NCBI GenBank assembly: GCA_051294905.1 | Contig: CM119386.1 | Span: forward strand, 2,046,001-2,110,000 | Source: Botryllus schlosseri | Taxonomy: Eukaryota | DNA length: 64,000 nt | Reading direction: 5' to 3' | Part shown: positions 888 through 38,474 of the stretch, in pieces | Layout of the letters: every line of letters starts with the position of its first letter | Position numbering within the stretch: the first letter of the stretch is position 1 | Made by a program: the position numbers and the translations under genes | Notes under the pieces: model-generated | Seen by the model: the letters and a program-made list of their open reading frames with translations, nothing else | What the model was told of the DNA's origin: nothing | The model's database searches: none

Positions 888-3800
888 TGAACTACAAGGC
901 TCACCGAGAGTACAACGGGAATCCACCGCCTCCGTTTCCGAATGCAAATATCATCACGTTTCAAATCGGCCAGCCGATTGAAGTCACCAATCAAGTTTCA
1001 CCGGACTGGTGGCAAGTGAGAGCTTTTTAGATCATTTTCAGGGATAATAATAATTAATCAGAACCAGGGAATCGCTGTGTGTATGTGTTGAATGTATTCC
1101 AACGTGTATAGAATATATATTTCTATATACAATTGAATAGTATATTCATATTGAAATGAACTCGAATATTTTCGGCTGACACTCGCCAAAGGTAATCGTC
1201 AGCAACTAGTACAGACTTAGCTGTCAGCCGAAAATATTCGGGTTCATTTCAATATGAATCTACTATTACATTCTATATTGAAGCTCTGTACCTCCAAGAA
1301 GCTCTTCGTATATTTCTATCCATAGTAATGAAGTTTGATTCATTTCGTGGCAATGCTAAAATGATTTATTTTGCAAGGCCACGCGTTGTTAATGGTCTGC
1401 TGATAGAAATATTACTAATGCGTAGGGAATATAGGGTTAATAACATAACCTCAAAAGTAACAAAATAGACAACTCTATCCAATGAATCTCATATCAAATT
1501 TTACTTCTTGCGTAAACAGCTTGTAACATGAATAATATAGATGGCTGTTAATAATGAACTATGTTCAAAATTTATTTTAATTTTTTTCCAGGGAAGGTCA
1601 CTTGCAGATTATGAGAAGATTGGATTTTTCCCGGCTTCCCATGTCAGCCCGGTAAGAGAAAAAAAACGGTTTCGGTACGGTAACGTAAATAAACGATGGA
1701 TTGTGAATTATGAAATAATTGAGGTGTACGCTTTTGACTCATCGACAACATGAGAGTCTACGAATCGCGGTCGCGTAGTTTGAAGTTGACGATCAATCTT
1801 GTCAAGTTGAAAACAAGATCGAGAAATTTCATTGACGGCATCGGACAGTATGAAAGTAGCTGTGAAATAATCGTTTGAGAATTTGTACCTCGCGGATTCA
1901 CTTAGCTAGATCCTATGTAGTCGGCATAGAGATAATCCCGGGATGACGTTAGTAGAAGCGACTGAAGTATAGTGAAGTACTGTGTTTATCAATACTACAA
2001 ATTGTAAGAGTCGTTTATCTATACTACGAATTGTCAGAACCGAATGTCTCTGTAATTTAAACGATGACTAAGAAACGCGAATGTGTTCAGGTAATGTCAT
2101 CAGTAGGGAGAAGTAAAAATTGCTGCTGCTGAACGTTTTTTGGTATTCATGCCAAGCTACCTCGTACGGGCACACAGTTCCAACCAAAAATGTAGAAAAG
2201 CACTACAATTCTAATATTATGTGCAACAATGCATAATTTAAATACTCGTGGGCGAAATTTTGTCAAAATTAAGTTTCATAATGTCAAAAAATGTAAAAAT
2301 TTTCATTTATTAGTGTAAAAAAAATAACCTCCCTAGTCGTCAGAACGCAAAGGATGTTTTGTCTTTACATTGTTTTCACTTCACTGTGTAACCGTAGAAT
2401 ATTGGTCGCGGAGCGGAATTTAACCCCGGCTTGTATTTGTAACCAAGTCGCAAGGTTCCGGGCCACAAGTCAATTAGACTTTTATAGTTTTGACTCGAGT
2501 CAAGTCGAGTCATTTTCAATTTACTACAGAGTCAAGTCCGAATCGGGGAGGGACTGGTCGAGTTCAAGTCATAGTGTTTACTGTTCAGTATCTTTTTTCT
2601 CACTCTAGCTAGACATGTTCATTCAAACAGATAAAAGTCAGTTTCTAGACCTATTTTTCAATTATCATTCCTGATATACGAGACTTCAATTAGTGATATA
2701 GAATGTGTCTAGTCATTTGACCGAGTCCAAAGAAGTAGAAGTGTACTGCGTTACTGACTGACTCTGGTTTTTATGCCGTTTTGACCCCGGAATACTACAT
2801 ACGATATGAACCCAGTTTAAAATTTCGCAACCGCCGCGTGGTCATACGAAAACTGCCGCCATTGTTCAGCATTCGAAAAGAGAGCCCCGAAAGAGTTACA
2901 TGGATGCCGTGATAAGGCCAGGGCCAGCTTCTCCGTGCCGGCCCACTGTACAAAACGAACCGGCTCACGAGACGCGCCTTGAGGACGCGCACTGGTACGA
3001 ATGTGACGTGGCCCGTTCAATGCATGCCCGTGTGTGTGGCACCGTTTTCTGTTGAATGGATCTTGATTGATGTGTCCTGTGTTCTTGCGTATAATTGTTC
3101 ATAATAATCAGTGTTTTTCTTTTATTTTTCTTTTCGTATCGCAGCACCGCATTGGCAGACCCGAACGGGACGACCCAACCAATAGGCCAAAGCCATGTCT
3201 GTCGAGCCACGAGCAATTAAAGAATTATTATTGGTATATAACGATACTCTGTGAATTCATTTTTAATCCAGTGGCGCTCAACCTTCGCTTGTGTACCGGT
3301 GAAGTTTTAGAAAGCAGAATTTAGCCCACAAATCTCGAAAGCAAATACTGTAACTTTGATTTGATGAGAAAATTGAGACTGCACCGTCATTCGTCATACA
3401 CAATTCGTTTGAAGTTTAGGCGCTTCTTCGATATACCCCTTCGATATAAAATTTATAAACGGAAAAATGTATTCTTTTTTTTTCATGTTGGGTACGGAAT
3501 ATTAGGGTTGTAGGTGGGTTAGGGTTATGGTTGGGGTTGGGGAATCCCAATATTAGGGTTGTGGGTGAGAGATACTAGGGTTAGGGATGACAGATATTAA
3601 GGTTTTGTGAATTACGTATATCAGGGTTGGGCGTGAGGGATATTAGGGTTAGGGGAGATAAAATCCCCGAACTAACGTCTAAAACCCCCAACCCTAACGT
3701 CTGTCATCCTCCAACCATAATATCTCCAACTCCCAGCACTAATACCCCTCCCCTACAACCCTATCATCTCCCTCTCAAAACCCTAATATCTCTCCCCCGC

Positions 3801-6800
3801 AACCCTAATATCTCCCACTCACAACCCTAATATCCCTCCCACTAAACCCTAACATCTTCCACCTACAACCCCAATAGTGGGATACCCTAACCCACTTCCA
3901 ACCCTAATATCCAGCACCCACGACTTCAATCCCAGCATGAAAAAGAATAAATTTTTCCGTTCATAAATATTGATCTCGGGGGGGGGGGGATAGGGGAGAT
4001 AAAATCCCCGAACTAACGTCTAAAACCCCCAACCCTAACATCCGTCATCCTCCAACCATAATATCTCCAACTCCCAGCACTAATACCCCTCCCCTACAAC
4101 CCTATCATCTCCCTCTCAAAACCCTAATATCTCTCCCCCGCAACCCTAATATCTCCCACTCGCAACCCTAATATCCCTCCCACTAAACCCTAACATCTTC
4201 CACCTACAACCCCAATAGTGGGATACCCTAACCCACTTCCAACCCTAATATCCAGCACCCACGACTTCAATCCCAGCATGAAAAAGAATAAATTTTTCCG
4301 TTCATAAATATTGATCTCGGGGGGGGGGGGGTATATCGAAGAAGCGCTGAAGTTTCTGGTAATGCAACTAACTCGATTTTGATCGTTTTATTTCTTTTAA
4401 AAGGACTTTGTCATTTTCTAGCCTCTATTTTAGTGTGAAATTAGCCAAAATGGTGCTGTCGAATTTAAGAGATTTTGTACAATAGTAATATATTTGGTGG
4501 GTGGGCTGCAAAGCTGACACATTCTGGCGGTTGAGAACCACTGGTGTTGTCATATTTAATCTGACGTAGCATTAGTTCATGTTTGATATTTTGTGCAGTG
4601 TTGAACTTGGTACAATATGCGTTGCATTGTCTTAAGCTGTGGTAAAATAATAGGGTTAACCGTTATTTTGAGTAGATGCTGGTGTGTGATAGCTCCCGTT
4701 GTGTTATGACGGTATACCCAACGTTCTTGTAAATGACTCAAGTTTTGAAAATACTGTCATATATAATGAACCTTGTTGCCGAATTTAGCTGTTCCCTGTT
4801 CGGTTTCCGTGAACTACAGAAGTACTTTGATTTTTCTGTTGCATGCTGTGGTCGGTTGTTGGTTATAAGTTTAATGTAATAATATAAAATTCCTGCACTG
4901 TGCTATTCTGATATTATATATTGGCCTCGTCGTCATAATGCCACTTCATAAAATCGCTGTGTGATTGGTTTGTGCTCTGTAAATATAATGAATGTGGCAT
5001 GATGTAGTGAAGATTGTAAATTTGGCATGATTTAGTAGAAATTTATGTTCGGTTTGTCATTGTACCCAACGATCAATCCATTATGGTAAAGTTTATGTCA
5101 GTACTGATAGGGACATCCTCTGAATGAAATGTGGATTGTATGCATATTATTGTGAATGGGTATTAGGGAGTGTAAATCTCTCAGATAGCCAGACCTCTGA
5201 ACATGATCATATCATTATCAGGGAATCCATACTGTCAGTAGCTGCCCCATTCACTTTGTCTGTGTTATTAGTCTCACAAACGTTTTTGACATTCATGTCC
5301 ATATTGGCACCTTATTTGAGCTCTTTTTATGGCACCTTTAACAGTCTGTGATTGCATTGATATAAATGTGTTGGTCTGGCGTGTTTGGTGGGTAATAGTG
5401 ATTTTTATATTCGTAAACGTATTTTGCATGTGATTGGCATCATTTTCAAAGCTGTGATGGTGTTGTGTTTGGGAAAAAGGTTTGACCGGTTACGTTTTAT
5501 GGAGAGTATCTTCAATTCGGTAATTTGTTACAGCTTTGCTGGCTGCATTTCCGAATATGCACATTTGGCAACAAGCTTCACAATGCACATTCACAATAGG
5601 CTATAATTCGGGTAATTTAAAGATTTGTAGTTTGGCCACTATGTATTTGTGTGATATTCATATCACAACTAGTAAATGATTCTCATAAATGAAGACTTGT
5701 AATGTGAAATCCCTCATCTTAACGTATGCTGTACAGTTGCTAACATGCCGAAAATATGGCCTATGTCGCTTTGCTCATATTTACTGTGAACGCGCAGGTA
5801 TGCTGGTGAAATTGTCCGGGGAGAGGCTGAGAAAACGCTCAAGGACAGGCCCACTGGAACATTCCTTGTTCGTAACAAGCCCCCTTTAAACCTCGTCTTA
5901 AGTCTCACGTAAGATATTTCTTTACTTGGTATACAATGTTTTAATGTGTTATGAGAGTACTCTCTGGTGTTGGTTACTTGATAGTTGATTTGTTTTGAGA
6001 TGATGTTTGGGAATTGGTCTAGGGGAGTGCTGTTCAACCAGTGTGTACTAAAATATGCATAAGGTGCACCAGTGCGAAAAAGTATATACTAGTCACACAT
6101 CACACAGGCTGAACTCCATTTAGACTGTTCCCTGCCTAAACTATGATAACAAATGACTAGACAAGGTAGTCACAGACCTACTCACGACATAATTCTCAAA
6201 TAATGATATGTTTTTTTCTAGTTTCTTGATAACATCCTGCCCTTTCACGAACCCCCTAAAACTATTTCGCGGACCCAAGCTTGAGAACCCCGCAATATAC
6301 GCTAATGAACTCTGATACGCAAAGTTTTTCTGTAGATGCAAAATAATTCGTTTGTTGGCAGGTATCAAAGCGACGTGAAGCACATCAAAATTCTGCAGAC
6401 CGACGACAGTTTGTTTTACGTAGCAGAGTGCAAGCATTTCCGATCCGTCCAAGTATGTTGTCACCTGTTTTAGTTGTGTCGAGTGCCTTATAGATGTCGC
6501 TTTGGTTCTAAGGAATTGATCAGATTTTATGAGAAAAATTCTCTCTCCGGCTTTTTCCTGGGGTTGGAAACTACTCTCAAATACGCGTATCGAAATCCGG
6601 AAATGTTTCCAGATCGTAACGGTATCAGGACAGGTGAGGATTCTAACCATGAATTTTCTTGGGCATACCGTGCAATGGACGCTCATTTGATTTGATTCTT
6701 TTAAAGTGAGTTCTGTGTGTGAAATCTAATGTATTAGGATCGGGTTTAGATCGATGTATACAAAAATGGAGCAAACACCATTAACCGACAGTCAACGGAA

Positions 6801-25900: not shown

Positions 25901-26659
25901 TAAGCCTGCGGCAATGCTTGACTAGTAATATAAACTTGTAAACTATTTTCAAATTCGTTTTAGATCATACAAGAGATTCGGTGACATGACCACTTTGACC
26001 ATTAGTCTACAGAACAGATATAGATACCTATTATTATTATTATATAAATTATTTACTACTGCGGCAACGTACGCTGCAAGCGGTCAATATATTCGTGATA
26101 GAACGATGGAGGCCGAGTGAAACCCAAAATCATTGAATGAATGAGGTCTGTCGCCATCACAAGTCACACCAGCTTATTATCGATAACAGTCCGAACACTT
26201 GTAGAGTATATACACAGCGATTTTCATCACACCGATAGTTGCTACCGATATTACGCGATGCAATAGCCAACATCTCAATCGCACCAATTTGTTTTTTTTT
26301 TATGATACAATGAACAAATCAAATCAAGATGCATACCGCGTACGTCTGTTAGATTTTTTACATCAGAACTTACATCAGACAAAACATCCAAGCTTACTAA
26401 ATGCATCGTTTAAGGCAGTGCATGGTTGTAAACCAGGGTGCCGATTGAAATGCTCAGGGTTGCCGCGTGAAAATGAGGTTAACAGGGTACAGGGTAGTGA
26501 GAGTAGTACCCGTTAACACAAATTAAGGTCATCCAAATCCTGGGTAGCATTTGGTGAGTTTTTAAAAAGGTCATCACATCACCTGTACTTAAAGGAGTGG
26601 ATGGTTCTCCAAAAGGTTCAGAAGCACTGTTTGGATTTCTCTAATTGACATTTGTCGAT

Positions 26660-27629
26660 ATATCAGTACATCCAGCTTGCAGTAGCAGAAAAGTTCAATC
26701 AGTATTTTTGCAACATTGGTCCGGATCTTGCAGCTTCAATACCAAACTCCTCCGATGACTTTCTCTCGTACTTGAGTCCTGGTCCTCAGAAATCCATTTT
26801 TCTTGAGCCGACAAGTGAAGGAGAAGTTGCGATCGTATTATCTGAAATGAAAAGTAACAAAGCAGTAGGACCCGATCTCATCCCAACTCACTTTCTGAAG
26901 CTAGTCTTTAATATTATTGGTGATGTTATATGCAATTTCTTCAATGAGTCGATACGTCTAGGCATTTTCCCAGATGCACTGAAAACTGCCAGAGTAATGC
27001 CGGTGTTTAAGAAAGGCTGTAAAAAGCTAATTTCTAACTACCGACCAATATCTGTTTTGCCAAATCTTGCCACGGTTTTTGAGAAACTGATTGACTGCCG
27101 ACTTAAGAACTTTTTTGAATTGAATGCAGTACTGTCTCCGACCCAGCATGGATTCAGATCCAACCACAACACCAACCATGCAATACTATCAATTGTAACG
27201 GACTATTACAAAACCATCAAGCAAAAAGAAAGTGGCTGCAGCATTTTTATCGATCTCCGCAAAGCTTTCGATACAGTTAACCACAGAATCTTAAGATACA
27301 AGCTAGAACACTATGGAATCAGGGGTACTGCAGCAACTCTACTTGAAAGCTACCTGGCAAACCGCAAACAATTTGTTAAACTGGGGACATTAAGAACGAC
27401 TACCAGAGATATAACTTGTGGAGTGCCACAAGGCTCAGTCCTTGGACCGACTTTTTTCCTCATTTATATTAACGACATTGTTAATGCATCTTTATTCCGC
27501 ACAACGCTATTAGCTGATGATACTCACCTCTTCATAACCTCCAACACTGTCGATGATTTGCATGCATCTGTGAATAGGGAACTCCCAAAAGTGTCGAGAT
27601 GGCTGCAAGCAAACAAACTAAGTTTGAAT
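26660..27629 (+). mobile_element. CR1/L2-type LINE, 5'-truncated; first half of the reverse transcriptase ORF
   Basis: ORF 26652-: KAVGPD, NYRPISVL, QHGFR, FIDLRKAFDTVNH, GVPQGSVLGP, LADDT, ending NKLSLN at 27629 where the transposon begins. Confidence 0.93.
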
Positions 27630-27901
27630 ACCACCGTGATTCTATTAGAAAAAGTACGCCATATGGGAAACACTGATTATTACGATGGGAGCATTATATA
27701 TTTCAGATTGGAAAATTTTCGAATATTATGAAAAGCGGTTGCCAGATAATTTTAACCTGCATTTATGTCGTGTTTAATACATTATAGCCAGAGTTGAATG
27801 GCTTTGTATCCTTTGACGAATACTAGGTATCCTAAACAACATATTAAAAGCCGTTTCAAACTTCGGAAGATGCTTGGAGCTGAGAACCATCGAAATATAT
27901 C

Positions 27902-28250
27902 GCGGGGGACATAGCGTAGTGGTGACGATAAGCGCCTACCAATCTGGGGACCCGTCGGAGGGTTATCTGGGCCCCTCTTCCCCGCTGTCACCGTTATTAC
28001 GGCGAAAAAAAGCCTCGACGAAAGAAGTCACTCACAAGGAATGCGCAAGAACTAGTAGAATGCATCACGACTTCAAAAAAAAAAGATCAACATCAAAGAG
28101 AACTGTGACATCGGGCACTCTAGGCCGAGGTGGATGTGAAATTAAAAGGATCACAACCGCGTGTCGTTCGACATACTCCTATCTGCTCATTACATGGCAT
28201 TGTGTCTTATCGCATTGTACATTGTGTGTGGTTGTTCAGTTGAAAAATAT
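27902..28250 (+). mobile_element. SINE-related element within the left arm (mirrored at ~35900-36245 in the right arm)
   Basis: GGGGGACATAGCGTAGTGG head; body ACTGTGACATCGG...CATTACATGGCATTGTG aligns with the 25057 copy. Confidence 0.7.
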
Positions 28251-28479
28251 AAGTCAATGATTATATATATAGCCGCATATAACGTCGGAAATTCCCTAAT
28301 GCACGAATTCAGATTTGTCGGACTTGATGTCGTTTTTAACATATCACAGTCAAAGAAAGAAGAACTTCTTACCTTGCTATGAATAGAAATGTACTTAAAT
28401 ATCACTAACAAAGTCATATTAATCTTTGGAAACCCTTCCGTAGATGAGAAATATCAAGATATATGTAGCTGCAAATTAT

Positions 28480-30384
28480 ATCTGAAATTGCGGAGTAGCC
28501 TACCCGAATCCAGATGTGGAAGGTGGAACTTTTCACCCTTATATGAATAGAATGGGTCCCTAATAAAATTTAAAAATCACTTTCAAACTTCGGAACCATC
28601 TTGGAGATCAGAACCATCGAAATATATCCAGGCGCAAGTTATGTCGGAAATTGCGCCTAATATACGCGAACTGACATGTGATGTCGTTTTTCACCTATAA
28701 TAGCATTGGTAGGAAGAACTTTTCACCCATATATGAATAGAAGGGGTCCCAAAGAACATTTAAAAATCAGTTTCATCCTTCGGAACCTGTGTGGAGACGA
28801 GAACCATCGAAATATATCCAAGCGTAATTTATGTAGGTAATTGCCTAATACGGGAATTCAGATGTGCCACACGCGATGGCGATTTTCACCTTTAATAGAA
28901 CAGGAAGGAAGAATTTTTTCCCCATATATGAATAGAAGGGGTCCCGAAGAACATTTAAAAATCAGTTTCATCCTTCGGAACCTGTGTGGAGACGAGAACC
29001 ATCGTAATATATCCAAGCGTAAATTATGTAGGTAATTGCCTAATACGGGAATTCAGATGTGCCACACGCGATGGCGATGTTCACCTTTAATAGAACTGGT
29101 AGGAAGAACTTATCACCCTATTATGAATAGAACGGGTCCCAAAGAACATTTAAAAAGCAGTTTCATCCTTCGGAACCTGCGTGGAGACGAGAACCACCGA
29201 AATATATCCAAGCGTAAATTATGTAGGAAATTGCCTAATACGGGAATTCAGATGTGCCACACGCGATGGCGATTTTCACCTTTAATAGAACTGGAAGGAA
29301 GAACTTTATCCCCATATATGAATAGAAGGGGTCCCGAAAAACATTTAAAAATCAGTTTCATCCTTCGGAACCTGCGTGGAGACAAGAACCATCGAAATAT
29401 ATCCAAGCGTAAATTATGTAGGTAATTGCCTAATACGGGAATTCAGATGTGCCACACGCGATGGCGATTTTCACCTTTAATAGAACTGGAAGGAAGAACT
29501 TTTTCCCCATATATGAATAGAAGGGGTCCCGAAGAACATTTATAAAGCAGTTTCATCCTTCGGAACCTGCGTGGAGACGAGAACCATCGAAATATATCCA
29601 AGCGTAAATTATGTAGGTATAATTGCCTAATACGGGAATTCAGATGTGCCACACGCGATGGCGATTTTCACCTTTAATAGAACTGGAAGGAAGAACTTTT
29701 TCCCCATATATGAATAGAAGGGGTCCCGAAGAACATTTAAAAAGCAGTTTCATCCTTCGGAACCTGCGTGGAGACGAGATCCATCGAAATATATCCAAGC
29801 GTAAATTATGTAGGTAATTGCTTGATACGGGAATTCAGATGTGCCACACGCGATGGCGATTTTCACCTTTAATAGAACTGGAAGGAAGAACTTTTTCCCC
29901 ATATATGAATAGAAGGGGTCCCGAAGAACATTTAAGAAGCAGTTTCATCCTTCGGAACCTGCGTGGAGACGAGATCCATCGAAATATATCCAAGCGTAAA
30001 TTATGTAGGTAATTGCCTGATACGGGAATTCAGATGTGCCACACGCGATGGCGATTTTCACCTTTAATAGAACTGGAAGGAAGAACTTTTTCCCCATATA
30101 TGAATAGAAGGGGTCCCGAAGAACATTTAAAAATCAGTTTCATCCTTCGGAACCTACGTGGAGACGAAAACCATCGAAATATATCCAAGCGTAAATTATG
30201 TAGGTATAATTGCCTAATACGGGAATTCAGATGTGCCACACGCAATGGCGATTTTCACCTTTAATAGAACTGGAAGGAAGAACTTTTTCCCCATATATGA
30301 ATAGAAGGGGTCCTGAAGAACATTTATAAATCAGTTTCATCCTTCGGAACCTACGTGGAGACGAAAACCATCGAAATATATCCA
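28480..30384 (+). repeat. 195-bp tandem array in the left arm (about 7 full units plus partial and degenerate outer units)
   Basis: Unit GTAATTGCCTAATACGGGAATTCAGATGTGCCACACGCG...AAATTATGTAG recurs with a period of about 195 bp. The ORF track shows the same 64-aa peptide at 28841, 29036, 29623, 29818 and 30013. Confidence 0.97.
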
Positions 30385-30400
30385 GGAGACGATTGTTGGG

Positions 30401-30949
30401 TTGGGCTGCTTTGGAGAGGATGTTTTTAATACTAACGAAGATGAAGTTGCAATATCCGGAACTTGGACCATCGAATTTAATGATTGGGCGAAATTGACAA
30501 AGAACAGATTGAAAAACAGATTTAATAAAAAATCGTATTATTACATTCCAATTTTCAAAAAAGTGACACAATATTATGACCGTTGCGTACCCGTGGTGAA
30601 GAATCAATACTTGAAAAATCAAATGCTGAACCCCCCTGAAAATTACAACGAAGGATACGTTCTCTTTCGCTGTGCTCACCACACATGCTGTAATTGCACT
30701 GCGGAAGGCAAAATCTTGTTTGTGCGCCAAGGAACTGGAATAAAATGTAACCTGGAACTTGCTGGACGCCGAAAACATATAGGGTGCAAACGATCGAGAC
30801 CGATGAGAGGGCCGGACAGTGAAGGTCTTGGCAAAGATTTGAGCTGCAAAAAACCTTCCAAGCTGCATAGAGAGCTCCGGGTTGCCCAAACCGAAAGGGA
30901 ACGGATTTCGGGAGCTCATACATACGCTCCGTCATTGGACGTTTTATAA
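30401..30949 (+). pseudogene. N-terminal part of the transposase, separated from the main ORF by an apparent 1-nt frameshift; no ATG visible
   Basis: Open frame ...FRCAHHTCCNC...KPSKLHRELR...PSLDVL* followed 5 nt later by in-frame IKSKFGVPCGW of the downstream ORF. Adding one base at 30947-30951 fuses the two ORFs. Confidence 0.7.
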
Positions 30950-30969
30950 AAATAAAATCTAAGTTTGGT

Positions 30970-33900
30970 GTGCCTTGTGGCTGGACTTCCGATGTCTTCC
31001 GAAACATTGAGTTGTTGAGGAAGATGTACGAGGAAGATGGAACACAATTCATTAGAGGCTGGCAAGGCTGTCCTTTAAGCGTCACATTATTCTCAACCTT
31101 TCAATTGGAATTATTCAAAGATTTGTGCCAGAAAGATATTTTGTATTTTGATGCCACTGGGACAATTATTCGGTCGGATGGAGGAAAAGCTTTTCAAATA
31201 TATTCGATTTTGGTCCGAAGCCCTTACAAAGATCTGCCAGGGATACCGGTAGCAAGCTACGTTACAACGTGCCATACGACTGAGAGTATAAAACATTTCC
31301 TCGGGTGTTTTAGAGATGCATGCTCGACGAAGTTGGTACCGAGATTGGTAATACTTGATGGCGCAGTCGCCCTATGGAACGCTTTTCTCTCCGTCTTTTG
31401 CAGTGAGACCAGACTCCAATATTATCATCGTGTGTACCGGATAGTAACGGGTGAAGCGTCGGGTAATGACTTGTGTTTAACCCTAATTGTCAACTGCCTG
31501 AGCCACTGCATGAAGGCCGCGTCCACTATGTGCAAAAGATATTACATTAAGAAGTACTACCGCGATGCTATGCATTGGATGGCAATGATATTTCTAGCCT
31601 TAACTATTCACGAAATGGATGCCATTATTAACCACTTATTTGTTGTGCTTTTACTGCGACAAAATTCCCCCCGGGTTGAAAAAAGTTTCCGAGCGCTACA
31701 ATCTCATATGACTAAAAATGAAAGCCTTAAAAATTTACCGGATCAGTTTTATGAGTATCAAAAGGACGATGACGTATTCGCGAATTTTATTATACACGAC
31801 AAGAGTCAAGAATACAAATCCCCGTTTTATCTGAGGTACAAAAACAAACTTGAATTATTTAAAAAATCTATAACTTATCAAGAAGGAAATGACCCCGGAC
31901 TATGGCCAACAACCAACAAATATTTTTCAGAGTCATTTTTTACCAAAATTGAAAACGTAATATTCCCAAGACTTGGTGCTACATCTGGACTTTTACTCGG
32001 CAATCTTGATCGACACGCCACAGGAACTGATTGCCCAAATGCTGTTTATCAAAGATTCGGCAGGGAATTTGAAAAAATTCGCTCTGCAAGTATGAAAAAT
32101 AATTTGCAATCAATTTGTGATTGTAACCGCACACAGGGTATTATAGAGCAGCATTTTTATGAACTGAAAAACATATATTTGGACAATACAAGATGTAGCA
32201 AAATTGACAAATTCATTTTGAAATACCACAAAGAAATCGTCACGTCATCTAAAATATTCGCGGATAGTTTATTACATCGCGGTTTCAAAAGAAGAAGGAA
32301 AACAAAACTGTCGAAGGAAACACAACAATTGGTGAAGTCGACTTTCAAAAAAAGGAAAAGAAGGCAGACTGGCTGCTTTACCTCCGGAGAACTATCAAAA
32401 ACATTGAAATTCGACAACGAGCCTTGTAGAAAGATCGGCAAAGGAAAAAATGAAGTAAGTTCGTCGTGGTATTTTAGTTAACTTTTGTACAATATACTTT
32501 ATAACCCTAGGAACTAGAATTACTTTGGACGAAAGGAAATGAAGTTGAAATGGTAGCTGCATATATTTCCTCAACTACGCTCTTCACGGGAGATTTGGGA
32601 ACCTTGCGTCCAGACAAATGGTTGAGCGGTGAAGTAAGTCGTATTAATGTAATTGACTATTGAATGTACCTAGAACTAAGAGCAGTTATTACTTCAGTTC
32701 GAACTCGTATGGTGATTATTTACAACGCAGGTCATTGATTACTATCTGCATATGCTGGCTGACTCGAAAACATATGTGCTGGATTGCAATGTAGCGACTC
32801 ATATCATTTTCAGCTCGGATGAAGAGCTAATCCGAAGGCAATCATTGCGAAAGGTACACAATACACACACATCCCTATTATTTAAATAAATAAATCTATG
32901 ACGATGATTATCAGTACGCCAATATACAATGATATCGTTGTGATCTTGTACGCACGATAACGATGCTATCGAAATGCACGGAGCATTGTACACTGAAAGC
33001 ACTTTGCAATCATCTACATATATTAATAGGTGAAATTCGATCACTACGAAAAGATCATTGCTGCAGTGAATAAGTTCCAACACTGGATGCTGCTGGTTGG
33101 TCACGAATTTCGAATTGCATATGATCGTTCGGCAATTCCAATAAAGCGCATTTATGTATGTACAGGTAATTAATATATCAGATGCCGAAATTTCATTACT
33201 AAATCCACTCGGAAGTACGAAAAAAAGCACCGTAGCTGCGGCAGAGAAATTCAAGTAAGATTATTTTACTTAGTCATGCCTATCATATCAATTGTACATA
33301 AGAGTACCACATTCATTTTTAGGAGGTATCTGCAAATCAGGAGCGAATCGGTCGATTGCCAATCCATGACGTCCAAGCAATGGAGTATCAGAATGTACGA
33401 TCATTCCATTCAGCAAGATGGTTACAACTGTGGCGTGTATGTCTTGAAGGTAAAAAAGTTGAGATTTCATTTTACGAAGTGCCCGTCATAGATCAGATTT
33501 TCAAAAGTTTGCAGAACAAGTTTTGGGAAGCACAGCTTTATCATTGGCAAGTATTCCGAATGAAGAGACTGACCTTCGGAGATTTCGGCACGAAATCGCA
33601 AGGCAAATATTAGACGAATCAGGTAAGGACATCTATATCGAATTAGATAGATGGAAACAGTAGTTCTATATCGATCAACATCATACGTAGTTAATTGGTT
33701 TCTTCGATTGTTACAGGGTCATATTTTCTTGTTTTGTTTTGCGAGTAATATATCTATGCTAACGAATCTTATGCATTCCACATTAAGATCCGATCGCCGA
33801 TATCTGCAGCTTTTGTGCTGACGCATCAACGCTTGATTCATCCTGGGTATGAGTCTTCCATTATTTACTCCAATTATGACCATATTAATTAAAAACATAT

Positions 33901-34062
33901 CATCAATATATCTGAAATATACCTCTGCGATACAATGACCATTTCTATATACCATAAAATGTTTGACAGGAGATGTGCCAAGGATGCAACCGGAAATATC
34001 ACGCGACATGCGCAAGGGACACAGTTAATGGGAATATATTCTGTCCTATTTGTCAGCCATGA
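30970..34062 (+). CDS. MULE-type DDE transposase fused to Ulp1/C48 cysteine protease and PHD finger (spliced)
   Basis: Exon ending at 32454 holds YFDATG, VILDGAVAL, CLSH and TQGIIEQHF (D, D, CxxH, E). Further phase-consistent exons: 32511-32633 (GDLGTLRPDKWLSGE), 32731-32853 (VIDYYL), 33030-33095 (HWMLL), 33166-33254 (LLNPLG), 33323-33449 (QQDGYNCGVYVLK), 33508-33622, 33788-33846 (ICSFC...W), 33970-34062 (EMCQGCNRKYHATC...FCPICQP*). Confidence 0.85.
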
Positions 34063-34196
34063 GTGACGACTGGAAATCTCATGAGGATTTTAAAAATAAT
34101 TCATGTTTCTTTTGCTACAATGTAAATATTAAATTCGTTGCATCTTTAACTGGTGACTTATACCTGCTGTATCGATATGTATGATGATTGCTGAGA

Positions 34197-34684
34197 ATTA
34201 TTATTATTATTATATTCTTTATTCACAGTAAAACTGGTAGATACACACATAATCCGGGGAGCAACCTGCCCCCAAAGGAAAATGGCGAGATTGGAGTAAA
34301 TTTTTAAAATTTCAGTTATACATTCAAATTGTTATTCCTATGCAATACACGGAGAAGTCAGATTACAGAATTGCAGCAGATGAAGAATTGGCAAGGGTTA
34401 CAGAGCAGAGGTAGAGATGATTGAAGATGAAGAATCGAAATTACAGAAATTATGCTGTGATTCACAAGTGTGATTTTAGTCCAGTGGTGCATTCAAGGCC
34501 TTCCGAAGAATGTGCACATTGCCCAATAATGTGATTTTCTGGATCATGTCGAATCGAACGTTACCCGGAATTTGTTGGATATGCCTCATGAGTTTTTTGC
34601 TCACGACCCCTGTAGCACCAATGACTATCGGTACAATGTTTATTTTGCATCGCCACATTTTCTCACATTCCATTTTGAGGTCTG
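34197..34684 (-). mobile_element. 3' fragment of an RLE-type (R2/R4-like) non-LTR retrotransposon
   Basis: Minus-strand frame DLKMECEKMWRCKINIVPIVIGATGVVSK...IQKITLLGNVHILRKAL* (stop at 34476), the typical C-terminal VPIVIGALG / LLGTAxILRKVL pattern of this group; (TAA)n tail at 34197-34213. Confidence 0.7.
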
Positions 34685-35650
34685 CGCGTGTGGCACATCT
34701 GAATTCCCGTATTAGGCAATTACCTACATAATTTACGCTTGGATATATTTCGATGGATCTCGTCTCCACGCAGGTTCCGAAGGATGAAACTGCTTCTTAA
34801 ATGTTCTTCGGGACCCCTTCTATTCATATATGGGGAAAAAGTTCTTCCTTCCAGTTCTATTAAAGGTGAAAATCGCCATCGCGTGTGGCACATCTGAATT
34901 CCCGTATTAGGCAATTACCTACATAATTTACGCTTGGATATATTTCGATGGTTCTTGTCTCCACGCAGGTTCCGAAGGATGAAACTGATTTTTAAATGTT
35001 CTTCGGGACCCCTTCTATTCATATATGGGGAAAAAATTCTTCCTTCCTGTTCTATTAAAGGTGAAAATCGCCATCGCGTGTGGCACATCTGAATTCCCGT
35101 ATTAGGCAATTACCTACATAATTTACGCTTGGATATATTACGATGGTTCTCGTCTCCACACAGGTTCCGAAGGATGAAACTGATTTTTAAATGTTCTTCG
35201 GGACCCCTTCTATTCATATATGGGGAAAAAATTCTTCCTTCCTGTTCTATTAAAGGTGAAAATCGCCATCGCGTGTGGCACATCTGAATTCCCGTATTAG
35301 GCAATTACCTACATAAATTACGCTTGGATATATTTCGATGGTTCTCGTCTCCACACAGGTTCCGAAGGATGAAACTGATTTTTAAATGTTCTTTGGGACC
35401 CCTTCTATTCATACATTGGTGAAAAGTTCTTCCTACCAATGCTATTATAGGTGAAAAACGACATCACATGTCAGTTCGCGTATATTAGGCGCAATTTCCG
35501 ACATAACTTGCGCCTGGATATATTTCGATGGTTCTGATCTCCAAGATGGTTCCGAAGTTTGAAAGTGATTTTTAAATTTTATTAGGGACCCATTCTATTC
35601 ATATAAGGGTGAAAAGTTCCACCTTCCACATCTGGATTCGGGTAGGCTAC
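34685..35650 (-). repeat. 195-bp tandem array in the right arm (3 full units plus partial and degenerate units), inverted relative to the left array
   Basis: Reverse-complement units at 34720-34914, 34915-35109 and 35110-35304. Confidence 0.97.
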
Positions 35651-36319
35651 TCCGCAATTTCAGATATAATTTGCAGCTACATATATCTTGATATTTCTCA
35701 TCTACGGAAAGGTTTCCAAAGATTAATATGACTTTGTTAGTGATATTTAAGTACATTTCTATTCATAGCAAGGTAAGAAGTTCTTCTTTCTTTGACTGTG
35801 ATATGTTAAAAACGACATCAAGTCCGACAAATCTGAATTCGTGCATTAGGGAATTTCCGACGTTATATGCGGCTATATATATAATCATTGACTTATATTT
35901 TTCAACTGAACAACCACACACAATGTACAATGCGATAAGACACAATGCCATGTAATGAGCAGATAGGAGTATGTCGAACGACACGCGGTTGTGATCCTTT
36001 TAATTTCACATCCACCTCGGCCTAGAGTGCCCGATGTCACAGTTCTCTTTGATGTTGATCTTTTTTTTTTTTGAAGTCGTGATGCATTCTACTAGTTCTT
36101 GCGCATTCCTTGTGAGTGACTTCTTTCGTCGAGGCTTTTTTTCGCCGTAATAACGGTGACAGCGGGGAAGAGGGGCCCAGATAACCCTCCGACGGGTCCC
36201 CAGATTGGTAGGCGCTTATCGTCACCACTACGCTATGTCCCCCGCGATATATTTCGATGGTTCTCAGCTCCAAGCATCTTCCGAAGTTTGAAACGGCTTT
36301 TAATATGTTGTTTAGGATA

Positions 36320-37281
36320 GGGGAGATGTGGTACCGATGGATCACTGGGACCGAAAATACTTTGAAAATTCTCTATGATAATTCCATGATTGCACTCCGT
36401 GAACTTGTCTACAATTGCATGCTGGCAAAATCTTTCCTCACATACAAAAAAATTCGACGTGAGCGAGCTATGGGGTCTCTCACAGATGATTTTTGTTTTG
36501 GGGGGTGTAAACTAAATTTAGATCGACATATACATTTTTCTTTGTAACCTTCAACACGAACAAACCAGCAATCATTTTTATTGTGAAGTGTAGGGCTTGT
36601 ATCAGGCTATATAATGACACCTATTATTTTTTTCAGTACTTTCCTTGAGTGGACTTTTTTTCGATTCATGTATAAAATTCGTAGGGTGGGGACCGATGAT
36701 ACAATAGCCAAATCAAGCAAAATAATCAAGCATACTAATCATGAAACAAATGAAACATGCCTAGGTACAGAAAATCTTTATCTAATAATTGCATATGATG
36801 TTTTATCGCTATAACGAGGTATTTGGAAGTCACGCTGTCGATTTCCGGGCAATATGTATGTACCCACAAATTTATAAGTTCGAGCCTAAATCGAAACGTG
36901 ATTTTATGACAACATTTGAGTTAATATTTATTCTATTTTTTGACAGTTGCGACCAAACATTCTTCTTTGGCTTGCTGCAGCTTAGATTATAATACTGAGC
37001 AAGAAAAGTAGTCACATTTGAGTTTTTTAGGGTATATGTGTCATAGGTCCCCGGGTCGTGTGTCATTGGACCCACCGGGTGGGGACCGATGACACGTTCG
37101 AGCAACAAATTTTGAACGTCCATAAATATTTTTTGAAAAGACGGATATTCATGTATATGTGCGCGATAGGTAGAGCTTGTATCAAAGTGCTGAGCCAGCA
37201 AAAGATCTGCTGTTTTCGGCTGAACATTTCGTGGCCAGCGATCATTTTCCAATTTTTGATCCATCGGTACCACATCTCCCC
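36320..37281. mobile_element. Non-autonomous MITE (~960 bp) with TA target duplication, inserted in the right arm of the large transposon
   Basis: 24-bp TIR GGGAGATGTGGTACCGATGGATCA and its complement. Flanked by TA at 36318-36319 and 37282-37283. The left arm shows the empty site (reverse complement GGATACCTAG). Confidence 0.88.
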
Positions 37282-37481
37282 TACCTAGTATTCGTCAAAG
37301 GATACAAAGCCATTCAACTCTGGCTATAATGTATTAAACACGACATAAATGCAGGTTAAAATTATCTGGCAACCGCTTTTCATAATATTCGAAAATTTTC
37401 CAATCTGAAATATATAATGCTCCCATCGTAATAATCAGTGTTTCCCATATGGCGTACTTTTTCTAATAGAATCACGGTGGT

Positions 37482-38474
37482 GTTTGAATGCAGATAAGAC
37501 CGAGATGCTCGTTTTAAATAATGCCAGTCATAATTTCACTGTGAACATCAATCATAAACAAATCTCAATATGTGACTCAGCAAAATATCTCGGCGTCACC
37601 ATTGATTCCAAATTGTCTTGGAAGCAGCATATTGAATGCACAATATCAAAACTAGCTCGGTGTGTGGGAATAATGACCCGTCTCCAATCTTTGGTTTCCA
37701 GATCAGTACTACGAACCATCTACTTCTCTCTTTTCCACTCGCATCTGCAATATGGAATCGTAGTATGGGGAAATGCATGTACAACATTTTTGTGCAGAAT
37801 TCGAACCCTGCAAAACCGTGCGATACGGCTGATCTCATCTGTACCTTTACGTACCAATTTATCGCCTTACTACCGTAAGCATCGAATTTTGCGAGTTGAT
37901 GAACTATATCGCTTCGAAGTATCAAAAGTTGTTCACAAATATTTTTCCAATAGTCTCCCTCCTGTGTTTGATGACTTTTTCATACCTGCTAAACATGTCC
38001 ATTCCCATTACACGAGATCTTCGTCTAAAGGAAACGTCTACTTACCCCAACCCAATAGCAACCTAACTAAGAGATCTATCGACTACTCGGGACCTATCAT
38101 CTGGAATGCATTACCATCGCATATCCGTGAATTGCCTTATAATAGATTCAAAAAAGCCCTACTTGATCACCTCTTGTCGTTACACTAACACTGTTGCCCT
38201 ACCTCGTCCAGACATTGCTTCATTGATCATTTGCTACCATTGTTTAATTTTTTTCTATTTTCCTTTCGTAACTAAACATTTTTTTACAGCCAGACTGTTC
38301 TGAGTCAAGTGTACCTGTTTGATGCTGGTGTGATCAGACTAGATGACCTTCACGGTCTTATCGATCATTCCTATCTAATACCGAATACTGTGCACGCATA
38401 TTTTCTGTACCACCATCACTGCCGTTTGTTATGTATTTTGGTTCGATGAAAATAAAGACTCTCTCTCTCTCTCT
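37482..38474 (+). mobile_element. Second half of the same LINE: RT C-terminus, 3' UTR and (TC)n tail
   Basis: LNADKTEM...KYLGVTIDSKLSWKQHI...YGIVVWG...GPIIWNALP to the stop at 38188; AATAAA at ~38451 followed by a (TC)n run at ~38458-38475. Confidence 0.9.

What the first reader, a model, noticed from the sequence alone, without database searches (positions are those of the whole stretch)
30970..34062. Transposase-Ulp1 SUMO protease-PHD finger fusion hidden in eight short exons
Seen in sequence: the ORF track shows only the 503-aa transposase, but eight further phase-consistent GT-AG exons extend it by a C48-type protease (WLSGEVIDYYL, HWMLL, QQDGYNCGVYVLK) and a complete C4HC3 PHD finger. 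Established knowledge: Ulp1-like proteases occur in several Mutator-group elements, and PHD fingers read histone H3 tails. Inference: one polypeptide could cut DNA, read chromatin at target sites, and remove SUMO marks used in transposon silencing, making it a candidate anti-silencing module.
Basis: partly seen in the sequence, partly recalled or inferred. Interest (0 to 1): 0.75.

Follow-up and report, generated by a model that had tools for sequence, protein, structure and literature searches.

The report
Foldback transposon gene: transposase-SUMO protease-PHD
This is the gene of a 9.85-kb jumping gene of the Mutator/Rehavkus type; its transposase is joined, through eight short introns, to a SUMO-type protease and a histone-reading PHD finger, a combination that is real but already catalogued, and this copy is damaged.

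Summary
ORF 30970-32454 continues through eight GT-AG introns into a 759-aa frame ending at 34062. All eight introns carry in-frame stops. RNA reads confirm the last two junctions. Colinear homology to a fish protein with the same layout (P0134; Pfam Peptidase_C48 and PHD above cut-off; phmmer 2e-30) supports all eight.

The gene lies in a foldback-type DNA transposon, 27630-37481. It has 2.8-kb inverted arms holding 195-bp tandem repeats and an 8-bp target duplication, and it is inserted in a LINE RT ORF.

The transposase has no Pfam hit. A profile search finds 400 relatives. Of 34 long ones, 16 carry a USP/UCH domain, 12 a C48 domain and 9 a PHD finger. Its model fits the IS256-family (Mutator-related) transposase best (Z 12.8). 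The upstream ORF folds like a WRKY-type zinc finger. Anatomy and PHD match published descriptions of Rehavkus; the 8-bp TSD does not (9 bp).

This copy is damaged. A frame break separates the DNA-binding part from the core, the catalytic Asp of the protease is Asn, and a small TA-flanked element sits in the right arm.

Ulp1 plus PHD in animal Mutator transposases was reported in 2010 (PMC2836005). The scan has also noted this kind on other DNA of the same genome. The anti-silencing idea is untested. New member of a known kind.

The parts
27630..37481 (+). Whole foldback-type DNA transposon, 9852 bp
   Evidence: The terminal 200 nt are perfectly inverted and the arms are 98% complementary over 1.4-1.6 kb. 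The insertion splits a LINE RT ORF in frame.
27622..27629 (.). Left copy of the 8-bp target site duplication GTTTGAAT
   Evidence: Direct reading. The joined flanks restore ...KLSLNADKTEM... of the RT ORF.
37482..37489 (.). Right copy of the 8-bp target site duplication GTTTGAAT
27630..30384 (+). Left inverted arm, with 9.6 copies of a 195-bp tandem repeat (28517-30384)
34685..37481 (-). Right inverted arm, with 4.9 copies of the 195-bp repeat (34685-35628) and a nested ~960-bp TA-flanked TIR element (about 36322-37279)
30401..30946 (+). Upstream ORF: N-terminal Cys3-His zinc-finger (WRKY/GCM1-like) part of the transposase. It is in a different frame from the core and ends in a stop at 30947-30949. 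There is no in-frame ATG before 30623.
   Evidence: tblastn to relative L001 gives 3e-19, and in L001 it is contiguous with the core. C62, C91, C99 and H126 are conserved. The model has pLDDT 82.6; its best matches are WRKY domains at Z 6.3 and 6.0.
30944..30970 (+). Frame break between the N-terminal part and the catalytic core in this copy
   Evidence: Frame analysis. A contig of run X1 differs here by one extra A behind 30945 and by T>G at 30947. Relative L001 reads straight through the equivalent place.
30970..32454 (+). Exon 1: DDE catalytic core (DATG at about residue 61, LDG at residue 130, CLSH, NRTQGIIE at residue 393) with an alpha-helical insertion domain and a basic tail
   Evidence: Alignment A4. 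AF2 model pLDDT 83.7. The ISCth4 (IS256-family) transposase is the best match: Foldseek E 2.7e-4, VIA Z 12.8.
32511..33622 (+). Exons 2-7 (32511-32633, 32731-32853, 33030-33095, 33166-33254, 33323-33449, 33508-33622): C48/Ulp1-like protease. His is in HWMLL, Asn replaces the triad Asp at 33202-33204, and Gln and Cys are in QQDGYNCG.
33788..34062 (+). Exons 8-9 (33788-33846, 33970-34062, stop TGA): C4HC3 PHD finger at the C-terminus
   Evidence: Both flanking junctions are seen in RNA reads.

Best explanation
The interval is the coding core of a recently inserted but defective copy of a foldback-type cut-and-paste DNA transposon (27630-37481). The element belongs to the Mutator superfamily and is most like the Rehavkus group.

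The family's single gene encodes one polypeptide with four parts: an N-terminal WRKY/GCM1-like zinc-finger DNA-binding domain; a DDE RNase-H-like catalytic core with an alpha-helical insertion domain; a C48 (Ulp1/SENP-like) cysteine isopeptidase; and a C-terminal PHD finger. In the window the last two parts are split over eight short exons.

Shown: the exon structure, the homology of each part, the transposon borders, the 8-bp target duplication, low-level spliced transcripts from this family, and the fact that relatives routinely carry C48 and/or USP/UCH domains and PHD fingers.

Inferred: the transposase binds repeated sites in the 195-bp subterminal arrays, cuts both ends and integrates with an 8-bp stagger. 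The protease removes SUMO or another ubiquitin-like modifier, and the PHD finger holds the enzyme on histone H3 tails. Together these would either blunt SUMO-dependent silencing or tune repair signalling at the break.

This copy cannot make the full protein (frame break at about 30945-30949) and has Asn in place of the catalytic Asp. If it moves at all, it would have to use protein from intact sister copies.
For: Gene model: phase, GT-AG; stops in every intron; two junctions in RNA reads.

C48 and PHD: phmmer of the spliced C-terminus against relatives gives P0134 2e-30, P0104 7.5e-24 and P0057 3.5e-10, the last over its Pfam C48 region. Pfam on P0134 gives Peptidase_C48 28.7 bits (cut-off 20.7) and PHD 27.3 bits (cut-off 24), in the same order. 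The alignment shows conserved His, Gln and Cys and the C4HC3 pattern.

Family trait: of 34 long relatives, 16 have UCH, 12 have C48 and 9 have PHD. P0084, P0047 and P0025 join transposase, UCH and C48 in single proteins.

Transposase class: conserved D, D, CxxH and E. Best structural match is the ISCth4/IS256-family transposase, Z 12.8, 12.0 and 10.8. MULE is the only Pfam family hit by more than one relative (2 members, best E 6e-4). The N-terminal model matches WRKY domains and Aft2 best.

Element.

Literature: Rehavkus is described as foldback transposons with long inverted termini, subterminal tandem repeats and a PHD finger. Rehavkus-1_TC is 9.5 kb with a 164-bp repeat (PMC6446971, PMC10218199, bioRxiv 10.1101/2024.12.02.626372). 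Ulp1 and PHD occur in Mutator transposases of hydra and lancelet (PMC2836005).
Against: The window's transposase ORF has no Pfam hit at all, and the MULE hits in relatives are below the curated cut-off. Hermes (hAT) scores Z 10.8 and P element Z 8.9, so the lead of IS256 is only about 2 Z units. The WRKY matches have Z about 6, below the level at which a fold match is safe. The TSD is 8 bp, whereas Rehavkus is tabulated with 9 bp. No Repbase Rehavkus sequence could be compared. Pfam finds no C48 hit on single exons, so C48 membership of the window protein rests on transitive homology. Six of eight junctions have no RNA support. The spliced reads over the last junction carry G at 33825 where the window has A, so they come from a sister copy or allele. 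No biochemical function was tested.
Confidence: 0.8

Rival explanations
1. The element belongs to the Zisupton/KDZ superfamily, whose members are multi-exonic and make 8-bp target duplications.
For: The 8-bp TSD. The multi-exon gene. Zisupton makes 8-bp TSDs and is multi-exonic (PMC12730594, PMC9297572). From my own memory only, Zisupton transposases can carry a SUMO-protease domain.
Against: PF18758 (KDZ transposase), which recognises Zisupton, hits neither the window ORF at E up to 1 nor any of the 34 long or 33 core relatives. The best fold match is the IS256-family transposase. The foldback arms with subterminal satellites are the Rehavkus anatomy.
Confidence: 0.06
2. It is a foldback element of the P or hAT superfamily, like Galileo. 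[quoted passage not shown]
For: The 8-bp TSD. D-69-D-262-E spacing with a large helical insertion. Hermes Z 10.8 and P element transposase Z 8.9. Foldback structure arose independently in the P superfamily, as with Galileo (PMC4079207).
Against: No THAP, BED, hAT-dimerisation or P-element Pfam hit in the window ORF or in 67 relatives. IS256 ranks first in both Foldseek and VIA. The N-terminal domain resembles WRKY/GCM1, the Mutator-type DNA-binding fold (that link is from my own knowledge; the fold match is).
Confidence: 0.1
3. The C48-PHD exons are a separately transcribed passenger gene captured by the transposon, not part of the transposase protein.
For: No RNA read spans junction 32454|32511. 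Mutator elements are known to capture host gene pieces (PMC8277862 abstract).
Against: Exon 1 runs in phase into exon 2, and the alignment to relatives continues across that junction. Relatives called as single uninterrupted ORFs join transposase, UCH and C48 (P0084, P0047, P0025), and NCBI models join transposase and C48 (P0057, P0134). 28 of the 34 long-relative domain hits are to a UCH or C48 domain.
Confidence: 0.04

Closest known systems
Rehavkus DNA transposons (Repbase; for example Rehavkus-1_TC of Tribolium castaneum), now filed under MuDR/Mutator
   Same: [quoted passage not shown] Size: 9.5 kb with a 164-bp unit in Rehavkus-1_TC, against 9.85 kb with a 195-bp unit here. [quoted passage not shown] Only weak similarity to canonical MULEs.
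   Different: The TSD is 8 bp here and 9 bp in the published table. The published host range is arthropods and annelids, whereas relatives found here are in fish and a sea cucumber; earlier scan notes call this genome a sea squirt, which I did not verify. The papers I could read do not mention a C48 or USP domain for Rehavkus. No sequence comparison with Repbase entries was possible.
Mutator-type transposases with Ulp1 and PHD from Hydra and Branchiostoma (Repbase Reports 2008-2009, shown in Fig. 1e of PMC2836005)
   Same: Animal Mutator transposases carrying a C-terminal Ulp1 catalytic domain next to a PHD finger.
   Different: I could not obtain their sequences, so it is unknown whether they belong to the same clade as this element.
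Plant KI-MULEs / Kaonashi and CUMULE (Ulp1-carrying Mutator-like elements)
   Same: A Mutator-superfamily element with a C48 domain (cited in PMC2836005).
   Different: The plant elements have clear Pfam MULE domains. From my own knowledge, they often carry the ULP-like gene as a separate or captured ORF. They lack foldback arms.
Ginger1 transposons (for example Ginger1-9_HM: integrase-like transposase + Ulp1 + PHD)
   Same: The same accessory pair, Ulp1 then PHD, at the C-terminus of a DDE transposase, with introns in the gene.
   Different: The catalytic core is Gypsy-integrase-like with 4-bp TSDs, a different superfamily.
Zisupton (KDZ superfamily)
   Same: 8-bp TSD and a multi-exon gene.
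   Different: No match to the KDZ transposase profile, and a different best fold match.

Membership tests
Peptidase C48 (Ulp1/SENP) | Sequence homology to the C48 catalytic domain (Pfam PF02902) | tested here: met
   Indirect. Single exons give no Pfam hit, and the spliced protein could not be handed to Pfam by reference. The spliced C-terminus matches P0134 at 2e-30, P0104 at 7.5e-24 and P0057 at 3.5e-10. Their aligned regions pass the PF02902 cut-off at 28.7, 31.4 and 53.7 bits.
Peptidase C48 (Ulp1/SENP) | Catalytic His-Asp-Cys triad plus oxyanion Gln | tested here: not met
   His (HWMLL), Gln and Cys (QQDGYNCG) are present. The Asp column holds Asn in the window (LLNPLG, codon 33202-33204), whereas all nine relatives that cover that column have Asp.
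Peptidase C48 (Ulp1/SENP) | Isopeptidase activity on SUMO or another ubiquitin-like modifier | not testable with these tools
   Needs enzyme assays.
PHD finger | C4HC3 zinc-ligand pattern with canonical spacing | tested here: met
   C-x2-C-x12-C-x2-C-x4-H-x2-C-x11-C-x2-C across exons 8-9. It aligns ligand for ligand with the PHD of P0134.
PHD finger | Pfam PF00628 above the curated cut-off | tested here: inconclusive
   The last exon alone scores 16.3 bits against a cut-off of 24, and zf-RING_2 scores 20.5 bits. Homologue P0134 passes at 27.3 bits. The full finger spans an intron and could not be scanned by reference.
PHD finger | Binding of histone H3 tails | not testable with these tools
   Needs peptide binding assays. 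The Trp of the common W-[FY]-H motif is Lys here (RKYH).
Mutator superfamily (MULE/IS256-like) | DDE triad with a C/DxxH motif after the second D | tested here: met
   DATG, LDG (D130), CLSH (H179) and NRTQGIIE (E393) are conserved across 33 sequences. The motif definition is from my own knowledge of Yuan and Wessler 2011, which was not readable here.
Mutator superfamily (MULE/IS256-like) | Match to the Pfam MULE profile (PF10551) | tested here: inconclusive
   No hit for the window ORF. Two relatives hit below the cut-off (best E 6e-4), and MULE is the only family hit by more than one member.
Mutator superfamily (MULE/IS256-like) | Catalytic-core fold closest to the IS256-family transposase | tested here: met
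   ISCth4 ranks first in Foldseek (E 2.7e-4) and in VIA (Z 12.8, 245 residues aligned). Hermes follows at Z 10.8 and P element at 8.9. The margin is modest.
Mutator superfamily (MULE/IS256-like) | WRKY/GCM1-type N-terminal zinc-finger DNA-binding domain | tested here: inconclusive
   Conserved C, C, C, H. The top VIA matches are WRKY domains (Z 6.3 and 6.0, full target length) and Aft2 (Z 5.8), but Z is below 8.
Rehavkus group | Long inverted termini with subterminal tandem repeats | tested here: met
   2.76-kb and 2.80-kb arms with 9.6 and 4.9 copies of a 195-bp unit.
Rehavkus group | PHD finger in the transposase | tested here: met
   Also present in 9 of 34 long relatives.
Rehavkus group | 9-bp target site duplication | tested here: not met
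   The TSD is 8 bp, GTTTGAAT. A 9-bp reading does not fit either side.
Rehavkus group | Sequence similarity to Repbase Rehavkus transposases | not testable with these tools
   Repbase is not available. Cluster names gave only fish and sea cucumber proteins.
Zisupton/KDZ | Match to the KDZ transposase profile PF18758 | tested here: not met
   No hit in the window ORF or in 67 relatives.

The most novel reading that the evidence does not exclude
In this whole transposase clade (400 relatives at E up to 1e-3) a ubiquitin-like-modifier protease (C48, USP/UCH, or both) together with a PHD chromatin reader may be an obligatory part of the transposition machinery. The element would bring its own eraser of SUMO/ubiquitin marks to chromatin. 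That could block SUMO-dependent heterochromatin or piRNA-type silencing at its own copies, or steer repair of the excision break. This would make it an animal counterpart of plant transposon anti-silencing factors.
Probability: 0.25. Interest if true: 0.7.

Novelty: new member of a known kind. Interest (0 to 1): 0.3.

Why it matters
It is a clean annotation case: most of a transposon gene is invisible to ORF finders because it is cut into exons of 59-131 bases.

It also shows that one poorly profiled branch of Mutator-type transposases (no Pfam hit) almost always carries a SUMO- or ubiquitin-type protease, often with a PHD finger, across fish, echinoderms and this genome. What these proteases do for a transposon has never been tested.

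An intact sister copy would be a good starting point for assays of deSUMOylase activity, histone binding and their effect on excision or silencing. This particular copy adds little beyond that, because it is broken.

Tried and rejected
- Pfam on the 503-aa ORF and on single exons gave no transposase or C48 hit. The exons are too short, and the spliced protein could not be passed by reference.
- The word-based protein search found only two relatives, and a second try with a profile was no better.
- A profile search against PDB sequences found nothing.
- tblastn of the spliced C-terminus against relative L001 found no C48 match, because that copy is too diverged and broken.
- Cluster names gave few organisms.
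- Yuan and Wessler 2011 and the Phantom paper are not held.
- Tm1/Phantom foldback elements were considered and set aside: they have strong FLYWCH and MULE Pfam hits and no protease.
- An exon 7 start at 33492 was rejected because it breaks phase.
- A search for an empty-site copy of the LINE target in the window found none.
Full report
**1. Observation**

The window holds a 503-aa ORF at 30970-32481. Leaving it at the GT at 32455 and joining eight further pieces gives a continuous 759-codon frame ending in TGA at 34060-34062. The pieces are 32511-32633, 32731-32853, 33030-33095, 33166-33254, 33323-33449, 33508-33622, 33788-33846 and 33970-34062.

All borders are GT..AG. The introns are 56-176 bases long, and each has in-frame stops, so the frame exists only after splicing. 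Phase is kept only if exon 7 begins at 33508; the AG at 33490-33491 fails.

**2. Is the gene model real?**

Raw RNA reads from public runs of the same species label show the joint 33622|33788: two reads in X24, plus one contig in X1. They also show the joint 33846|33970: nine reads from six starts in single-cell run X22. Depth over the rest of the gene is near zero, so the other six junctions are untested by RNA.

The nine reads over the last junction carry G at 33825 where the window has A (a synonymous change). They therefore come from a sister copy or an allele, and they show expression of the family rather than of this copy.

Independent support comes from homology. The spliced C-terminus (264 aa) matches P0134 at 2e-30 over residues 1-254. 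It also matches P0104 (7.5e-24), P0030, P0084, P0023 and P0057 (3.5e-10). The multiple alignment runs across all eight junctions without gaps at the joints.

**3. The protease and PHD domains**

P0134 is an anchovy protein, XP_063075866.1. It has Pfam Peptidase_C48 (28.7 bits, cut-off 20.7) followed by PHD at its very end (27.3 bits, cut-off 24). P0057, a sea cucumber protein, has transposase then C48 (53.7 bits).

The window protein keeps three protease residues:
- the catalytic His (HWMLL);
- the oxyanion Gln;
- the catalytic Cys (QQDGYNCG).

The triad Asp is Asn (LLNPLG, codon 33202-33204), whereas all nine aligned relatives that cover that column have Asp. The PHD ligands align one for one with those of P0134. 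On its own the last exon gives only sub-threshold PHD and RING hits.

**4. The transposase**

The 503-aa ORF has no Pfam hit, and the word search found two relatives. A profile search of 1.84 billion representatives found 400 proteins at E up to 1e-3.

An alignment of 33 cores shows conserved DATG, a second D (D130), a CxxH (H179), an LLGDLSRH motif and NRTxGxIE (E393). The AlphaFold model is confident (pLDDT 83.7, pTM 0.83).

Structural matches, in order:
- ISCth4, an IS256-family transposase: Foldseek E 2.7e-4; VIA Z 12.8, 12.0 and 10.8.
- Hermes: Z 10.8.
- P element transposase: Z 8.9.

From my own knowledge, IS256 is the bacterial family related to eukaryotic Mutator. MULE is the only Pfam family that more than one relative hits, though below the cut-off (2 members, best E 6e-4). 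No KDZ, hAT or P profile is hit.

**5. The missing N-terminus and the frame break**

An upstream ORF (30401-30946, another frame) is homologous (3e-19) to the part of relative L001 that runs straight into the DDE core. It carries conserved Cys, Cys, Cys and His residues.

Its model (pLDDT 82.6) matches WRKY domains best (Z 6.3 and 6.0, over the full target length) and also Aft2 (Z 5.8). These scores are suggestive only.

In the window this ORF ends in a stop at 30947-30949, and the core frame opens at 30871, so the two overlap out of frame. A contig of run X1 differs here by one extra base behind 30945 and by a substitution at 30947. Relative L001 has one continuous frame at the equivalent place. 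The window copy is therefore frame-broken.

The homology also starts upstream of the first in-frame ATG (30623). The start codon is either on an exon I did not find or has been lost.

**6. The element**

- Borders: inverted arms run from 27630 and to 37481. The outer 200 nt are perfectly complementary, and a further 1.6 kb is 98.4% identical.
- Repeats: the arms hold 9.6 and 4.9 copies of a 195-bp unit.
- Target site: both ends are flanked by GTTTGAAT. Removing the element and one copy restores a LINE RT ORF...RWLQANKLSLN|ADKTEMLVL.... A 9-bp duplication does not fit.
- Nested insertion: the right arm alone contains a ~960-bp insertion with 24-25-bp perfect TIRs and a TA duplication, while the left arm keeps the empty site.

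The copy is young (intact TSD, near-identical arms) but damaged in three ways: the frame break, the Asp to Asn change, and the nested insertion.

**7. A family trait**

Among 34 long relatives, Pfam finds UCH (USP-type deubiquitinase) in 16, Peptidase_C48 in 12 and PHD in 9. P0084, P0047 and P0025 combine transposase, UCH and C48 in one protein. P0003 has PHD, transposase and UCH. P0077 has transposase and a C-terminal PHD.

Several of these come from metagenome gene calls, which are uninterrupted ORFs. In those, the fusion is physical. The metagenomic relative L001 has PHD, zinc finger, DDE core, a C48-like piece with His and Asp, and UCH, in broken frames.

**8. Comparison with what is known**

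[quoted passage not shown] Rehavkus-1_TC is 9.5 kb with a 164-bp unit. They have a PHD finger, 9-bp TSDs and only weak similarity to MULEs, and Repbase now files them under MuDR. The element here fits this description except for its 8-bp TSD. I could not compare sequences with Repbase.

Bao, Kapitonov and Jurka (2010, PMC2836005) show an alignment of Ulp1 and PHD domains of Ginger1 and Mutator transposases. They list Ulp1 in Mutator elements of hydra, lancelet and plants, and Ulp1+PHD in Ginger1-9_HM. They note a C19 deubiquitinase fused to another transposase, and they propose a role in DNA repair signalling. The combination is therefore catalogued.

Zisupton shares the 8-bp TSD and the multi-exon gene, but its Pfam profile does not match.

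Earlier notes of this scan report the same kind of element, with Ulp1, PHD and sometimes USP, at several other places in this genome, and they call the genome a sea squirt. I did not verify the organism.

**9. Mechanism**

Shown: the structure of the element and of the gene, the homology of each domain, and the recurrence of the accessory domains.

Inferred:
- cut-and-paste transposition with an 8-bp stagger;
- binding of the transposase to repeats in the arms;
- removal of SUMO or ubiquitin-like conjugates by the protease;
- chromatin tethering by the PHD finger.

Two purposes are on the table. The other is control of repair at the break (PMC2836005). Nothing here decides between them.

**10. 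Verdict**

This is a new, damaged member of a known kind, and its interest is modest. The open and testable question is what the built-in Ub/SUMO proteases do for this transposon clade.

Noticed in passing
window 36322-37279: A ~960-bp element with 24-25-bp perfect terminal inverted repeats (GGGGAGATGTGGTACCGATGGATC...) and a TA target duplication is nested in the right arm only. The left arm keeps the empty site TTTAGGATACCTAGT. It is probably a Tc1/mariner-type MITE that inserted after the host element.
   Followed up: partly
window 34129-34684: A very high-copy repeat lies between the stop codon and the right arm: contig word depth of 1000-5000 in run X1, and abundant in RNA runs X22 and X24. 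A minus-strand ORF (34476-34769) runs from the first 195-bp unit into it.
   Followed up: no
window 26652-27629 and 37484-38188: The target of the insertion is a non-LTR retrotransposon RT ORF (…LLADDTHLF…), split in frame by the 9.85-kb element.
   Followed up: partly
window 33195: Four RNA reads of run X24 follow the window up to 33195, inside exon 5 and not at a splice site, and then continue with unrelated sequence (CGAAGCAGGTTCACGG...). This is unexplained. It may be a rearranged sister copy or a chimeric transcript.
   Followed up: no
L001 6766-15488: A metagenome-derived eukaryotic contig carries a 33%-identical relative with PHD (26.8 bits), zinc finger, DDE core, a C48-like piece and a USP/UCH domain (25.1 bits), in several broken frames. 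A piggyBac-like ORF lies nearby on the other strand.
   Followed up: partly
relatives P0084, P0047, P0025 (protein ids): Some relatives carry two different isopeptidase domains, USP/UCH and C48, in one protein after the transposase. P0025 also has an N-terminal PHD.
   Followed up: partly
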